DNA of 64,000 bases from Macrostomum hystrix (GCA_950097015.1 CATNEN010000024.1:1612001-1676000), one strand, 5' to 3'; shown: positions 9,164-14,931, counted from the stretch's first letter. The notes: generated from the sequence alone by a model not told the origin. Numbers and translations: made by a program.

Positions 9164-12100
9164 TCACACGGTGGTCAGTTCAACTGCTTCGCAGCTGCTG
9201 ACATTCGCGCCGCTATCCGCTGGCCGATGTCGGCGACGCTTTTGACGCTCGGACGCGGAGTCACCGCGCGGCTGGCGCTGACAGGCCCGCAAAGCTTCCG
9301 ACAGGCCGGCCCCGGCCAGCAGGCGGCGCAGCTCGCCGACGGTGGCTGCAGAATCGGCGGCTTCGCTGAAGCGGCTCAGAAGGAGGCCTGCTGGGCTCGT
9401 GGAGTCGCTCTTTGCTAGGGACTCCAGCTCCGAGACAATGTCAGCGTCGAAGCCTGCGGCGGGAATAATCGACAAAAGCTTCTTTTTAGCTCTACTATCA
9501 GTAGTACTAATAGGCAATTGGAAATTTCATTTAAAATTCATTCTTTTTCTTCATCCATGGCATAGACTTGCAATGCATTCTGCTCCTTTACCCGTATGAT
9601 AGATTAGCAATCCATTCTGCTCCTTCATCAAGCAAGCAAGTCTCACCCATCTCGCCAGCCAGTGCCTTCCAGCCGTCCTGACTGCTCAGTGCCTGCTCCA
9701 GCTTCTTCCTCTGCGTCTCGGGCAGCAGTGCAAGCTTCAAAGTATCGCCGCTGTCGCAATCTAATTCGACACCTTCGGGCGCAGTTTCCTTCAGCGGAGC
9801 GGTGACACCGGCCGCGTGCGGGTGCGCCGGCTGGAGCTTGGCGTCGCGGCCGCGGCTGCGCGCGTGCTTGAGCACAATCCAGAGCACCAGGCCGCAGATG
9901 AGGGCGCCCAGGAGGCCGCAGTAGAGCGGGATCAGGTTGCTGGCCACCGCGGGCGCTCTGGATGGAATCGGCTGCTCAAGCGGCTCTGTGTGGCAAACGG
10001 TGCAGCAAATATAATTAAGAGACCGGGAGACAACCAACCTGGATACCGCACCGTCAGGCAGGTTAACATGAACCAGGTGCAGATTGCTCAGCAACCACAA
10101 TCAGTGAGGGCTCGCTTTCGAATCATTGAATCGAAAAAAAACACGAAACATCAAGGATAAGATGCTTCAGTAAATGAATAGACACGAAGTAGATAAGAAT
10201 GAGTGTGGGACAGCCCGGATCTCCGGTGGCATAGAATGAAATTTAAATTTACAATCGTTGCTATCTGCCTCTCCCAATGTGTCCTAGCGAGTTCCTCGAT
10301 CGATCGATCAGTCGCGGGGCTTCGGTTACGCAATCACAAAGAACCGACGCGAGGCAGGCAGCCTTGTAAACAATGTGATTCCATCCTAAGTTTTCCTTGT
10401 TCCCCTTATCTCAGTGAGTTATATTTATCTGTTCCGAAAGCTTCGATGGCAACCGCGCGGACTCGACTGTTGGGGAGTGATTTTTGCATCGACAATGTTT
10501 GCACTTTGCACACAAGTGGGCGGCATTTGGTAAAACTGGCAAATGCGGCTGTCCTCCATGGACAACCACTACAGCCACAATTTGGTAATTTAAGAAAATA
10601 TTTCAGTAGAAAATTGCTAGAGGCCGTGTATGATATCCATGGCTAGTCTTGATCCCGAGACTGAGGTTATTGGCCATAGACATTTTGCTAGTCGGAACAC
10701 TTGTAGATTTATCCCCCCTTTTGTCCCAGGCGAGTGACTATGGCGTACGTTTTCATATTTTCCCTAGGTGAAAAAGTAATTTATTTCCCGCTGCCCAGAA
10801 AAAAATCGGAACAACAGTTAAAAACTAACGCCCGTTGCAATTACGGAGGATACATACCATACTTTCTATCGTAGGCACCGAACCTCCGCATCGCGTGACT
10901 GCTGTGGATCAGTTCACAGTATAAAGACCAAGGGAGCACTTCTCTTTCTGTAATATCCCAATTTTTTTTTACAATTGACTTGAAAATCCAGAACATGGCC
11001 TTACATTCTCTACCTGATCCGATGAAACAAATTCCAGAATCACCAATTATCGGCATCATCAAGATATTCAAGGATTCTCGTCGGGGTGTCAGTTGGCAAA
11101 AACCATCAATAAAGGCGTAATTTTTCTGCTCCTAAAATTTCAAAATGAAACCTTGTCGGTTCCGCAAGCTATGCCAATCAGTCGCAGCGCAGGAACCTTT
11201 GATCTCAGCATCCCAGTCACCGGGGTCCCCATCATCACCGTCTGGAGCATCGGCGGCGACCCTACCTTCAACAAAGGCACCTGATCGACATCTCAAAGGA
11301 TCTATAGTTATCAAAGGAATTCTAGATTAACAATAACAGGTAAATGAAGGCAAGGTGTCTTGCCAAAGTTGAGGACAAGGCAAGTAGGCAAAACACTGAG
11401 CGATAAATCAGTGATGGGCGGCTTCTGGTCTGCCCTCCCGCACTGCCGTCAGCTCCCCTATTTGGTCCTTAGCTGGAGGCTGCTGAAGGGTCAGTGCCTC
11501 TGCAAATTCGATCCGCGACCTTCACGCTCCGAGCTGCGGGCCAAGACCTGACTGACTGATGACCGTCGAGCTAGGTGGGGTGGTTGTGTCACATACACCG
11601 GCGCGTGTAAAATACTGATCCCTGCTGTGTGGGCATGGACCGCTCGGGTACTTTTAACTTGAAAGAAAAGTGTTGGGCTTAAGGTGCCGGCCAGAAGATT
11701 GGGAAGAAAGGTAAAGCAAAAAATAGTTTCCACTTTTTCCAACCGGCTCTCAGTCACCTGAATGTCACAGCTTAACTGAATGGCTGCTGCTGCTGTTGTT
11801 GTTGTTACTGCTGCTGCTCCTGCTATGCCAACTGGATTGCTGTGCTCACGAGCTCCACTGATCATCCAGTCAGCGGGCCTTCACCTCCCATCCCTGAACC
11901 TTCATCAGCGGGCCTTCACCTCCAATCCCTGAACCTTCATCAGCGGGCCTTCACCTCCCATCCCTGAACCTTCATCAGCGGGCCTTCACCTCCCATCCCT
12001 GAACCTTCATCAGCGGGCCTTCACCTCCCATCCCTGAACCTTCATCAGCGGGTCATCACCTCCAATCCCTGAACCTTCATCAGCGGGCCTTCACCTCCCA

Positions 12101-14931
12101 TCCCTGAACCTTCATCAGCGGGCCTTCACCGCCCATCCCCGAACCTTCATCAGCGGGACATCACCTCCCATCCCTGAACCTTCATCAGCGGGCCTTCGCC
12201 TCCCATCCCTGAACCTTCATCAGCGGTTCATCATCTCCCATGCCTGAACCTTCATCAGCGGGCCTTCGCCTCCCATCCCTGAACCTTCATCAGCGGGTCA
12301 TCACCGCCCATCCCTGAACCTTCATCAGCGGGTCCTTTAACGAACCTTTAACATGAACCTTAATTAACCTGAACCTTTAACGAAGCCTATACCATTTTTA
12401 CGGAATAGACTAACAAAATATGAAGAATGGCACCCGGCAATAATTAAGATACCTAGACTTAGGTCAAGCTAATCAGCTTTCACGGACAGGTTGGGCAATT
12501 TCAACTAGAGGTAGCTCGTTGAAAAATCATGGATGGGGGCTATAAAACCGTAGTGATTTGTTGCACCTCCCAGAGCCAGAGAGCGATACAAATAAATAAT
12601 AGTTTTCTGGTGGGTTCGACTGCAATTTACCTTCGCATGCACAGGGGCAGAGCTAACCAACACCTTTTAAATTAGGCATGGAGCGGGGTGGGTGGAGTGT
12701 GTGCGCAAGGCTCCTTTGTGGATGCGCCGCCGCCGCCTCTCGTATAGCTTATGTTGTGAGTCAAGGCAGGGCCAGCGTGTTAACTGGCGGTTACGGTCAG
12801 ACTTTACGACCGGAAAGTTTTATTGCCCTTCGGGTTCTTTACACTATTTAACTGGGAAAAAGCAGCTACACAGAGGGAGAGAGAGAGATCAAACGCGCCG
12901 CCGCTAAATAACCAACCAAGAGCCAAGCCTCATTCGCAATGCCCACTGGTGCCAGCCGCCTTTAAAACTAGTGATTTACAGCCCCTCCCCTTTGGTCTGG
13001 CCAGCCCACCCCCTCCGCCCGGTGTCACTTTGCGGTTCGGGTCGAAAACAATCGCTATAGAGAGTTATAAGCTATGCTATTATTAAAGGCTGTCTTTAAG
13101 AGGCTGTCTGCAGACGGAGCAGACGCATACAGTACAGGCGAGCAGAAAAAAATTGAAAGCAGAATTAAATTTAGAGTAAATCCAATAACTGCAAATTCTC
13201 ATTTTCAGAGTTACAACTGCTGCTATCAAGGAGAATAGACGGCGCGTCGTCTGCATCTGCCTACCAGCTAGTCCCAGATAGAGGACACAGGAAGGAATGA
13301 GGCGAACCCAGTTTTGGGACACAGAATCTTTGAAGGATTGAATGAAAACTTTTTACTGCTGGTCGATACGATGAGAAAGCCCTGCTGTTATTTGTGAATC
13401 AGGGTTTCAATAAATTGCGTCTTTAGGAAAATTCAACAACTGGCCCGCCTTCATGTGAGAAAAGAAAATGATAAAAGGAGAACTGAGTAAAAATAACTAA
13501 GAATGATACATGACAAAATTGAACACAATTTTAATGAGAGTATGAAGTCCGTAATCTAAAGTCCACAGCACAGGCCATTACGCATAACGAAATTGTAATT
13601 TACAAGTCTATGTTGACGAAGTAGGGAGTTGATAAAATCCTATGTTTTCTAGAACCAGCGGCATAACCTCATTAAGCAGTGTTGGACGCGTTACCAAAAT
13701 AAGTAACGGCAATGGCGGTAACGATTGTTACTGACCATTTGATTAAGGGAAAATAAGGTAACGAAATAATACAAAAATAGTAACGGTCGTTACTTTTACT
13801 CGTTACTTTGTTTTTTACACCTCTACCAAAAATCTGCTATTTTTTATGTAAGCATGTTATAAATACGTGTAGCTTTGTTTATCGGTCACTGCTCACATCA
13901 TATGTTGTAATTTCCAACATCGTCCACTTTTTTAGACACCCTTATCACTATCACTCTCACCATATCGGGCTAGGGTTTAGTAGCCATGAGATCACAAAGA
14001 TTTTAGATTAAATGGCTGATATTGATGACTGATGGGAATATAAAATTGTCGTCCGAGTCAGACTATAGCATCAGACTAGAGTCAGTCTCGATGTATTGAC
14101 CGATAAATATTTCACGAAATGTGGAGTTCACAACAAGAAGAAACAAAAAGCTTCTAATAAAAATGAATGCAAAATGTATCAATGTAAAACAAAGAAATCG
14201 AAAGATATAGTTGCTAGTTATATAAATTTGACTATTTTTATGCTAGTAATTCGAATATAAAATTTGAAAATTTGAAACGTTTTAAATGCAGCAAAATAAA
14301 TAATTTACAGTGCTGCTAATTTCTAATTAATTTAACAGGTAACGAAAACTGGTAACGGGAAATGCACATTGTTGGCAACGACTAGTTACCATCATTTTCG
14401 TTACCAGCCCGTGGTAACGCGAAAAATTAACGTTGCAAAAAGTAACGATCGTTACAAAATTGGTAACTAGTAACGAGTAACGCGCCCAACACTGTCATTA
14501 AGTACTCATGTTAAAACATTTGGCGCCAATTCGGAATTCAGGTAATCAGAGCTAATTAGCTAATCAGTAGAGCTAGCACAACTTAAAGGTATTAATATAT
14601 CTAACTCTCAATGGATAGGTGTGAGGTTAAGAGCCTCATAGCTTCAGTTCATCCAGCTGCAAACTGGGTACCAGACATCAGCTAGCGAAGAAATTTGGTG
14701 AATGTAAAGTACCCCAGTCCATGGACTGAACGGCTGCGACTGAAAGACTACTTTCGGCTCGGACATTGTCCAAATCAAGACGCGCCACTCACCCGCGGTC
14801 GAGACTGTCCGATTGTTGGCGCCGCCGCCGCCCACCTGCGCCTGGCCATTGTCAATTAGCAACTTCCAGTCGAAGTCTGACAGCTGCTCAGCGGCTGCCT
14901 CCGGCCTCCTATTGCTGGGATTGGGAGCCAT
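9164..14931 (-). CDS. p75NTR/NRADD-like single-pass death-domain protein, 4 exons, 298 aa
   Basis: Exons 14931-14793, 11280-11152, 9985-9647, 9453-9164; all phase-1 GT-AG junctions, 897 nt. TM SNLIPLYCGLLGALICGLVLWIVLK resembles p75 DNLIPVYCSILAAVVVGLVAYIAFK. PEGVELDCDSG resembles PEGEKLHSDSG. Death domain LPETQRKKLEQAL..WKALAGEMGF..SPAGLLLSRF. C-terminus is -TTV. Exons 3-4 are firm; exons 1-2 are less certain. Confidence 0.82.
10900..11110. mobile_element. Fragment of dispersed repeat family also at ~46000-46380 and ~51460-51700
   Basis: Shares TGAAAAT..GAACA with both other loci; shares TTCCAGAATCAC..TCGGCATC and TTCTCGTCGGGGTGTC with 51500-51580. Confidence 0.5.
11870..12333. repeat. 35-bp minisatellite (CAGCGGGCCTTCACCTCCCATCCCTGAACCTTCAT)
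   Basis: About 13 copies in intron 1 of the p75-like gene. Confidence 0.95.
13677..14494. mobile_element. Non-autonomous hAT-type DNA transposon (818 bp)
   Basis: 18-bp TIR CAGTGTTG(G/A)..CGCGTTAC with 1 mismatch; perfect 8-bp TSD TCATTAAG (13669-13676 and 14495-14502); many subterminal GTAAC/GTTAC motifs; no transposase ORF. Confidence 0.9.

What the first reader, a model, noticed from the sequence alone, without database searches (positions are those of the whole stretch)
9164..14931. Invertebrate p75NTR relative with NRADD/NRH2-like architecture (no signal peptide, no cysteine-rich domains)
Seen: a 4-exon, 298-aa model with strong p75-like landmarks. These are TM NLIPLYC (keeping the Cys equivalent to the p75 dimerising TM Cys), juxtamembrane PEGVELDCDSG, a death domain, and C-terminal -TTV (p75 ends -SPV). 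The ~106-aa N-terminus has a single Cys, no hydrophobic leader and an N-R-T sequon. Known: mammalian NRADD/NRH2 is a type III membrane p75 paralog that lacks CRDs and modulates Trk/p75/sortilin signalling. Inference: a ligand-independent p75-type death-domain adaptor in an invertebrate, either ancient or convergent with NRADD. This is the best candidate for a novel system here, relevant to apoptosis and regeneration signalling.
Basis: partly seen in the sequence, partly recalled or inferred. Interest (0 to 1): 0.78.

Follow-up and report, generated by a model that had tools for sequence, protein, structure and literature searches.

The report
Flatworm p75 receptor relative without ectodomain
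A Macrostomum flatworm expresses a small membrane protein that keeps the membrane helix and death domain of the p75 neurotrophin/TNF receptor but has lost the ligand-binding part. It arose separately from the similar mammalian protein NRADD and offers a tractable animal for asking what such truncated receptors do.

Summary
Spliced contigs from public runs match the window without a mismatch. They show three exons on the minus strand (15002-14793, 9985-9647, 9453 to below 9150) and a 255-aa ORF, not four exons and 298 aa.

Exon 2 passes Pfam's cut-off for the p75-type transmembrane domain. The best solved-structure matches are NRADD and the p75NTR membrane helix.

The host is a Macrostomum flatworm. 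M. lignano has an orthologue in three copies of 281-283 aa. It has the same intron positions, the same upstream POU-homeobox neighbour and no cysteine-rich domains (CRDs).

M. lignano also has a separate full-length p75-like TNF receptor. Its last three exons match the three exons here one to one, including a stalk motif DWKxLIDNG and an N-glycosylation sequon.

CRD searches found the CRD exon in two control loci but nothing in the 64-kb window or the M. lignano locus.

In a tree, the CRD-less proteins group with the flatworm's own receptor, and mammalian NRADD sits inside vertebrate NRH1. The NRADD-like layout is therefore convergent.

The proposed function, modulating the full-length receptor through the membrane cysteine and death domain, is inferred only.

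The parts
14793..15002 (-). Exon 1. The 5' UTR is 15002-14932 and the CDS runs from ATG 14931 to 14793 (46 codons plus the first base of a split GAG codon). It corresponds to the stalk exon of the full-length flatworm p75-like TNFR.
   Evidence: Contigs of X3 and X4 start at 15002 and 14999 and run colinear to 14793 with no mismatch. The ATG at 14931 is the first ATG in the contig.
14845..14871 (-). Stalk motif DWKLLIDNG (residues 21-29).
   Evidence: These columns are invariant between the window, the M. lignano orthologue P0001 and the full-length receptor P0011.
14806..14814 (-). N-glycosylation sequon N-R-T (residues 40-42).
   Evidence: N40 and T42 are invariant in all three proteins (N-R-T, N-F-T, N-L-T). 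Glycosylation itself was not tested.
9986..14792 (-). Intron 1 (4807 nt, GT..AG, phase 1). It contains dispersed repeats and no supported exon.
   Evidence: The joint 14793>9985 is seen in X3 and X4. Contigs that lie inside the intron carry about 10% mismatches or more.
9647..9985 (-). Exon 2. It encodes the end of the stalk, the TM helix, the basic juxtamembrane stretch, PEGVELDCDSG and the first part of the death domain.
   Evidence: Pfam TNFR_16_TM scores 30.5 bits against a cut-off of 25.6. PDB matches are NRADD 6hj7 (E 2.7e-5) and p75 TM 2mic.
9870..9938 (-). p75-type transmembrane helix (residues 63-85). It includes Cys69 (9918-9920) and the AxxxG motif ALICG (9891-9905).
   Evidence: In the global alignment of exon 2 with M. 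lignano, TM plus flank is identical at all but two of about 37 positions.
9837..9869 (-). Basic stop-transfer flank KHARSRGRDAK.
   Evidence: Net charge is +4 on the C-side and 0 on the N-side of the helix. By the positive-inside rule this implies N-terminus out and C-terminus in.
9454..9646 (-). Intron 2 (193 nt, GT..AG, phase 1), inside the death domain after ..AGEM|G.
   Evidence: The joint is seen in X3, X4 and X2. The position is the same in M. lignano P0001 and in P0011.
9164..9453 (-). Exon 3 coding part. It encodes the rest of the death domain (to about 9281), the basic KRRRHR stretch (9224-9241), the tail -TTV (9167-9175) and the stop (9164-9166). The 3' UTR continues about 350-410 nt below 9150.
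   Evidence: The tail VELTTV is identical in M. lignano.
18156..19046 (-). Upstream neighbour on the same strand, a single-exon POU-homeobox gene. It is not part of the gene, but it bounds the space available for 5' exons.
   Evidence: Pfam Pou scores 70.3 bits and Homeodomain 63 bits. The same neighbour lies 2 kb upstream of the M. lignano orthologue.

Best explanation
This is a real, expressed, three-exon Macrostomum gene for a 255-aa single-pass membrane protein.

Shown:
- It has a roughly 62-residue N-terminal stub without a signal peptide or cysteine-rich domains. The stub keeps the stalk motif DWKxLIDNG and an N-x-T sequon.
- It has a p75NTR-type TM helix with the conserved Cys and AxxxG, a basic inner flank, a p75/NRADD-type death domain and a [T]-x-V tail.
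- It arose from the flatworm's own p75-like TNF receptor gene by duplication that kept only the last three exons (stalk, TM with juxtamembrane region, death-domain end). It is therefore convergent with mammalian NRADD/NRH2/p45.

Inferred:
- It inserts N-terminus out and C-terminus in, as a type III membrane protein.
- It binds no ligand itself. It acts as a modulator or adaptor by pairing with the full-length receptor, or with itself, through the TM cysteine and the death domain, as p45/NRADD does with p75.
For: Transcript:
- Spliced contigs with no mismatch in two runs define exons and joints. A third run shows the second joint.

Family:
- TNFR_16_TM scores above Pfam's cut-off.
- Sequence matches in the PDB are NRADD and the p75 TM for exon 2, and the NRADD death domain for the orthologue's death domain.
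- The AF2 model of the orthologue has pLDDT above 90 for the TM helix and death domain. It superposes best on the p75NTR death domain 4f44_A, with TM-score 0.87 and rmsd 1.4 A.
- The language-model neighbours are NRADD and truncated TNFRSF16 clusters.

Conservation:
- The M. lignano orthologue P0001 has three copies of 281-283 aa.
- Intron positions and phases are identical, and dN/dS is about 0.3-0.4.
- The POU neighbour is the same.

Origin:
- P0011's last three exons match exon for exon.
- The stalk motif and sequon are shared.
- In the tree, the window protein and P0001 are sister to P0011 (support 100/98). Mammalian NRADD sits inside vertebrate NRH1 (98/100).

No CRDs:
- tblastn with six ectodomains and a home-made HMM of 78 ectodomains hit the control loci L002 (133 bits) and L003 (128 bits).
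- The same searches gave at most 7.4 bits in the window and 9.1 bits in L001.

Mechanism model:
- p45-p75 heterodimerise through Cys58-Cys257 and the death domains (PMC4122344).
Against: - The 5' end is not mapped. The reading frame stays open upstream of the ATG as far as 15132. The contigs end at 15002 and 14999, just after a plausible acceptor (cag at 15004-15002). An upstream exon or a spliced leader therefore cannot be excluded.
- The run type is not on record. That the contigs are RNA is inferred from the GT..AG joints.
- The tree lacks true NGFR and other invertebrate or flatworm p75 receptors, and the flatworm branches are long.
- The DSG juxtamembrane motif is not kept in the M. lignano orthologue.
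- Topology, glycosylation, dimerisation and any signalling are untested.
- The structure model used an alignment of p75-family members, which may bias it towards that fold.
Confidence: 0.8

Rival explanations
1. This is only the 3' part, or an internal-promoter isoform, of a complete p75-like receptor gene. Its signal-peptide and CRD exons would lie further upstream, beyond the POU gene or outside the window.
For: The frame upstream of ATG 14931 is open to 15132. The contigs stop at 15002 and 14999, next to an acceptor-like cag preceded by a pyrimidine-rich stretch. Vertebrate p75NTR has a short isoform lacking CRD exons (PMC2772990).
Against: - There is no CRD-like coding sequence anywhere in the 64-kb window, including 49 kb upstream, or in 10 kb upstream in M. 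lignano. The same searches found the CRD exons in both control loci.
- A POU gene sits directly upstream on the same strand in both species, only 2 kb away in M. lignano.
- M. lignano has an in-frame stop 16 codons before its ATG.
- M. lignano carries the full-length receptor at a separate locus.
- All three M. lignano gene models (g1-g3) lack CRDs, and the 281-aa sequence also has older UniRef and UniParc records.
Confidence: 0.1
2. It is a transcribed but functionless relic of a partial gene duplication.
For: It looks like a truncated copy of the parent gene. The N-terminal 20 residues are poorly conserved and of low complexity. No function has been tested.
Against: - The ORF is intact in two species and in all three M. 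lignano copies.
- Intron positions are identical and dN/dS is 0.28-0.41.
- The TM and inner flank are almost invariant. The stalk motif, the sequon and the VELTTV tail are conserved.
- It is expressed at contig depth of about 13-14.
Confidence: 0.06
3. The death domain belongs to another death-domain family (UNC5, ankyrin, MyD88/IRAK), and the p75 resemblance is limited to a chance TM match.
For: The top Foldseek row by E-value is the IRAK4 death domain (E 8.7e-3). All death domains share one fold.
Against: - That IRAK4 row superposes poorly (rmsd 9.6 A, TMt 0.59). p75NTR death domains give TMt 0.81-0.87 at rmsd 1.4-1.9 A.
- The only death-domain sequence matches in the PDB are NRADD.
- TM, juxtamembrane region, death domain and tail align colinearly with p75-family proteins.
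- The exon structure equals that of the flatworm p75-like receptor.
Confidence: 0.02

Closest known systems
Mammalian NRADD / NRH2 / p45 / PLAIDD
   Same: Both lack a signal peptide and CRDs and have a short ectodomain stub. Here the stub carries an N-x-T sequon; NRADD's own N-glycosylation is from my own knowledge. Both have a p75-type TM helix with the cysteine that pairs with p75 Cys257, a death domain and a [S/T]-x-V tail. NRADD is the best PDB sequence match for both the TM and the death domain.
   Different: It is not an orthologue. NRADD nests within vertebrate NRH1, whereas this gene is sister to the flatworm's own receptor. The inner flank is KHARSRGRD, not KCWRSxKQKQQLAKA. The stalk motif DWKxLIDNG was seen only in the three Macrostomum proteins compared here. 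Its partners (Trk, sortilin, p75) are unknown in flatworms.
Platyhelminth p75/NGFR-like TNF receptor (M. lignano P0011; SmTNFR family, PMC7519573)
   Same: This is the parent family. The last three exons are the same, with the stalk motif, sequon, TM, death domain and intron phases shared. The two are sister groups in the tree.
   Different: The parent has a CRD exon (Pfam TNFR_c6, 38.8 bits), and this gene has none. The published survey reports a single TNFR per flatworm and no diversification. It searched by CRDs and so would have missed this paralogue.
p75NTR C-terminal fragment after ectodomain shedding, and the short s-p75NTR splice form
   Same: Each is a membrane-tethered stub with TM and death domain, without most or all CRDs.
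   Different: Those are products of the full-length gene, made by proteolysis or exon skipping, and start from a signal-peptide precursor (PMC2772990). Here the truncation is fixed in a separate gene. Whether gamma-secretase cleaves this protein is untested. That it cleaves NRH2 is from my own knowledge.

Membership tests
p75NTR / TNFRSF16 family | TNFR cysteine-rich domains (Pfam TNFR_c6) in the ectodomain | tested here: not met
   There are none in the ORF, in the 64-kb window or in the M. lignano locus. Positive controls scored 128-133 bits.
p75NTR / TNFRSF16 family | Cleavable N-terminal signal peptide | tested here: not met
   Exon 1 has no hydrophobic stretch; the highest 15-residue hydropathy mean is -0.05. 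The 5' end is not mapped experimentally.
p75NTR / TNFRSF16 family | p75-type TM helix (Pfam TNFR_16_TM) with the conserved Cys and AxxxG | tested here: met
   It scores 30.5 bits against a cut-off of 25.6. It aligns to p75 TM 2mic and to NRADD with the Cys in register.
p75NTR / TNFRSF16 family | Cytoplasmic death domain of the p75 type | tested here: met
   Window exon 3 alone scores 16.3 bits because the domain is split. The orthologue scores 32.2 bits against a cut-off of 22.6. PDB sequence matches are the NRADD death domain only. The best superposition is on the p75NTR death domain.
p75NTR / TNFRSF16 family | Binds neurotrophin or TNF-type ligand | not testable with these tools
   There is no ligand-binding domain, so binding is not expected.
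NRADD / NRH2 (as an orthology group) | Descends from the vertebrate NRH1 lineage | tested here: not met
   In the tree it is sister to M. lignano P0011 (100/98). Mammalian NRADD lies inside vertebrate NRH1 (98/100). True NGFR and other invertebrate sequences were not sampled.
NRADD-like architecture (functional class) | No signal peptide, short CRD-less N-x-T-bearing ectodomain, p75 TM with Cys, death domain | tested here: met
   Glycosylation and topology are inferred, from the conserved sequon and the charge bias.
NRADD-like architecture (functional class) | Heterodimerises with the full-length receptor through the TM Cys and death domain and modulates its signalling | not testable with these tools
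   This is a model taken from PMC4122344. Only the residues needed for it are shown to be present.

The most novel reading that the evidence does not exclude
Macrostomum flatworms independently evolved a dedicated, ligand-blind partner of their single p75-like TNF receptor. It would be either a constitutive mimic of the shed receptor stub or a TM-cysteine heterodimer partner that sets how the full-length receptor responds to the flatworm's TNF ligands, for example in cell death during regeneration. That would make truncated partners a recurrent design feature of p75 signalling, open to RNAi and transgenesis in M. lignano.
Probability: 0.3. Interest if true: 0.6.

Novelty: new variant of a known kind. 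Interest (0 to 1): 0.45.

Why it matters
The role of NRADD/NRH2 is still poorly understood, and it has been treated as a vertebrate peculiarity.

An independently derived counterpart in a flatworm genus suggests that a CRD-less partner is a repeatable solution for tuning p75-type receptors. Macrostomum regenerates and is genetically tractable, so the idea can be tested there.

It also corrects the published picture of one TNF receptor per flatworm with no diversification (PMC7519573). That survey searched by CRDs and could not see this paralogue.

Tried and rejected
Contigs lying inside intron 1 are mismatched repeats.
- Upstream CRD exons were sought three ways, and none was found: a crude Cys-density scan, tblastn with the M. 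lignano CRDs and five vertebrate ectodomains, and a home-made HMM of 78 ectodomains.
- The 255-aa 'CRD-less' p75-like model of the annelid Ridgeia piscesae (P0008) looked like a parallel case. It is an annotation artefact, because a CRD exon lies at L002 9538-10239, overlapping the model's first exon.
- The word-index search with P0001 found only P0001 itself; only the 8000 candidates sharing most words were scored.
- The search with P0011 residues 236-470 found only M. lignano fragments.
- The listed best 120 of 240 hits of the profile search were vertebrate NRH1/NRADD-lineage proteins, apart from a few unnamed rows. I obtained no true NGFR and no other invertebrate p75NTR, so the tree lacks them.
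- P0013 and P0014 are garbled models of the full-length gene, not further paralogues.
- Paper searches for NRADD with invertebrate and p75NTR, and for Mlig015487, returned nothing.
- Spliced-leader trans-splicing at the cag at 15004-15002 was considered. The contigs carry no leader sequence, and no second read-laying run was available, so it is left open.
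Full report
**What is in the sequence**

Exon 2, read by reference as window:9648-9983:-, matches Pfam TNFR_16_TM at 30.5 bits against a curated cut-off of 25.6. Exon 3 alone matches the second half of the Death domain profile at 16.3 bits, below the cut-off because the domain is split by an intron. Against solved structures, exon 2 matches NRADD (6hj7, E 2.7e-5) and the p75NTR transmembrane helix (2mic, 5zgg). 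The membrane cysteine is in register with theirs.

**Transcript evidence**

Six public runs hold the stretch. I laid contigs of four of them on 9150-15140. Two runs each gave one contig, of 1207 and 1260 nt, that matches the window without a single mismatch in three blocks: 15002 (or 14999) to 14793, 9985 to 9646/7, and 9452/3 to below 9150. The joints are GT..AG on the minus strand. A third run shows the second joint.

The run type is not on record, so that these contigs are RNA is inferred from the splicing. The gene therefore has three exons, not four.

- ATG 14931 is the first ATG in the contig.
- The ORF is 46 codons, a split GAG codon, 112 codons, a split GGC codon, then 95 codons and a stop, which gives 255 aa.
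Contigs lying within intron 1 are mismatched repeats.
- The contigs run colinear through the suspected acceptor at 14952.

**Anatomy of the protein**

- Residues 1-62 are a stub with no hydrophobic leader and no cysteine. The stub carries DWKLLIDNG (residues 21-29) and N-R-T (residues 40-42).
- Residues 63-85 are the helix NLIPLYCGLLGALICGLVLWIVL, with Cys69 and an AxxxG motif.
- The inner flank KHARSRGRDAK has net charge +4, against 0 on the outer side. By the positive-inside rule this points to N-terminus out and C-terminus in.
- PEGVELDCDSG resembles the vertebrate family consensus PEGEKLHSDSG.
- The death domain spans residues 134-217.
- A basic stretch KRRRHR follows, and the protein ends in -TTV, which fits a class I PDZ-ligand pattern.

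**Organism and orthologue**

An exhaustive phmmer search with exon 2 found eight proteins at E up to 0.001. The best was P0001 (282 aa, 70% identity), a 'hypothetical protein' of Macrostomum lignano. Earlier notes of this scan also call this genome a Macrostomum flatworm.

- M. lignano has three copies of 281-283 aa, and none has CRDs.
- Its locus has the same three exons with identical intron positions and phases.
- Amino-acid identity to the window is 21/43, 76/111 and 54/90 for the three exons, and dN/dS is 0.28-0.41.
- TM plus inner flank is identical at all but two of about 37 positions in the global alignment, and the tail VELTTV is identical.
- A POU-homeobox gene lies directly upstream on the same strand in both species, 2 kb away in M. 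lignano and 3.1 kb from the contig start here.
- In M. lignano an in-frame stop lies 16 codons before the ATG.

**Parent gene**

M. lignano also has a full-length p75-like TNF receptor, P0011 (513 aa), at another locus. It matches Pfam TNFR_c6, TNFR_16_TM and Death. Its exon map has four relevant exons:

- a CRD exon;
- a stalk exon ending ..ARTE|;
- an exon with TM, juxtamembrane region and the start of the death domain, ending ..ELG|;
- a final death-domain exon.

The last three correspond one to one, with the same split positions, to the three exons of the CRD-less gene. The stalk motif DWKxLIDNG and the N-x-T sequon are invariant among the window protein, P0001 and P0011. The CRD-less gene thus looks like a duplicate that kept only the last three exons and gained a start codon inside the stalk exon. 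Conservation of a glycosylation sequon only makes sense if the stub faces the lumen or the outside.

**Are CRD exons merely missed?**

Three kinds of search found none. A Cys-density scan gave nothing CRD-like. tblastn with P0011's CRDs and five vertebrate ectodomains gave no hit below E 0.1 in the window or in the 25-kb M. lignano locus. The same queries found the CRD exon of P0011 (L003) and a CRD exon in an annelid locus (L002) at E 1e-9 to 1e-29. A profile HMM that I built from 78 ectodomains scored 133 and 128 bits on those controls, but at most 7.4 bits in the window and 9.1 bits in L001.

The annelid result also shows that the 255-aa 'CRD-less' Ridgeia model P0008 is an annotation artefact. 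Macrostomum is therefore the only invertebrate case I saw.

**Which death-domain family?**

The orthologue's death domain matches only NRADD death domains among PDB sequences (2ib1, 6hj7). An AlphaFold model of P0001 has pLDDT above 90 for the TM helix (83-111) and the death domain (about 158-239), and a low-confidence stub. The death domain superposes best on p75NTR death domains: 4f44_A with TM-score 0.87 and rmsd 1.4 A, 4f42 with 0.83, and 1ngr with 0.81. IRAK4, Pelle, RIPK1, MyD88, UNC5 and ankyrin death domains fit less well. One caveat is that the input alignment consisted of p75-family proteins. Language-model neighbours are NRADD and truncated TNFRSF16 clusters.

**Ancient or convergent?**

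I built a maximum-likelihood tree on 179 columns running from just before the TM helix to the C-terminus. For this local step only, the window row was assembled in a script from the exon translations, with X at the two split codons.

- The window protein and P0001 group together (99/97) and are sister to P0011 (100/98).
- The three mammalian NRADD sequences form a clade (98/100) inside vertebrate NRH1-type proteins.

The NRADD-like layout therefore arose separately in Macrostomum. The limits are that the flatworm branches are long and that the profile search returned only NRH1/NRADD-lineage vertebrates. True NGFR and other invertebrate p75NTRs are absent from the tree.

**How it most likely works**

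The following is shown: expression, architecture, conservation and origin.

The following is inferred. The protein inserts as a type III membrane protein and cannot bind a ligand itself. It acts through its TM cysteine and death domain by pairing with the full-length receptor or with itself. The model comes from p45/NRADD, which heterodimerises with p75 through Cys58-Cys257 and through the death domains and thereby blocks p75 signalling (PMC4122344). The TM and inner flank are the most conserved part of the protein, more so than the death domain, which fits a membrane-embedded interaction. Free-living flatworms, including M. lignano, have TNF ligands (PMC7519573), so the pathway being modulated may be TNF-type rather than neurotrophin-type. 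A second possibility is that the protein mimics the shed p75 stub and is cut by gamma-secretase. That was not tested.

**What remains open**

The 5' end is not mapped. The frame is open upstream to 15132, and the contigs end just after an acceptor-like cag at 15004-15002. A 5' exon or a spliced leader therefore cannot be ruled out. The POU neighbour, the M. lignano stop codon and the negative CRD searches make a hidden CRD-bearing 5' part unlikely; I put it at about 0.1.

**Novelty**

Database records call the M. lignano proteins hypothetical, 'death domain-containing' or 'TNFR_16_TM domain-containing'. The flatworm TNFR survey reports a single receptor per species with no diversification. It searched by CRDs. 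No paper in the library joins NRADD with invertebrates, and none mentions Mlig015487. The scan's notes hold nothing on it. I rate it a new variant of a known kind, of moderate interest.

Exons were searched by reference, and P0001 served as the full-length proxy.

Noticed in passing
window 18156-19046 (-): This is a complete single-exon POU-homeobox gene (296 aa; Pou 70.3 bits, Homeodomain 63 bits). It lies directly upstream of the p75-like gene on the same strand, and the same gene pair is adjacent in M. lignano (L001 5915-7971).
   Followed up: partly
window 15147-16950: A purine-rich tandem repeat fills most of the space between the POU gene and the p75-like gene. GC skew is 0.44-0.48, and it reads RGRLRGREELERGR in one frame.
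   Followed up: no
L002 9538-10239 (Ridgeia piscesae JAODUO010000186.1): The annotated 255-aa 'CRD-less' p75-like protein KAK2186859.1 (P0008) is a truncated model. A CRD exon (133 bits with my ectodomain HMM) overlaps its predicted first exon in another frame.
   Followed up: yes
L003 10001-10051 (M. lignano P0011): The predicted first exon of the full-length M. lignano receptor (MPRVRAALVKPADGQPQ) has no hydrophobic leader, so that gene model's 5' end is probably incomplete or wrong.
   Followed up: no
window 9747-9779 versus L001 exon 2: The juxtamembrane PEGVELDCDSG resembles the vertebrate PEGEKLHSDSG and is kept in the window species. In the M. lignano orthologue it is replaced by an acidic stretch (PDFEAEDDFPDD).
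   Followed up: partly
window about 20340-20630, 31200-31411, 39400-39700, 60487-60680: A dispersed repeat occurs in at least four copies on both strands. In one frame it reads ..[26 protein letters not shown]... It is probably a transposable element or SINE.
   Followed up: no
window 53344-54471 (+): An intact 375-aa ORF has HTH domains and a DDE_3 endonuclease domain (56.3 bits). It is probably a Tc1/mariner-type transposase that may still be active.
   Followed up: partly
window 24584-32324 (+): There are three long ORFs for mucin-like proteins with hundreds of residues of PPPMGSTRPSGS or PPTG repeats. They end in EGF-like cysteine modules, and the last ORF also has a TM segment (EGF_3 35.8 bits).
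   Followed up: partly
window 39198-48869 (+), 3584-5938 (-), 55327-57720 (-), 62552-63145 (-): Other genes in the window are an SLC4 bicarbonate transporter (Band_3_cyto 134.9 bits, HCO3_cotransp 268.5 bits) and an ammonium transporter whose exon region contains a 20-30-aa tandem repeat. There is also a 797-aa ORF with a trematode PH-like domain (39.2 bits) and a rhodopsin-type GPCR fragment.
   Followed up: partly
proteins P0058, P0088, P0097, P0108 and others: Many bird 'NRADD-like' proteins of 220-350 aa are listed with the TM and Death domains but without TNFR_c6. CRD loss in the NRH1 lineage may not be limited to mammals, or these may be truncated models.
   Followed up: no
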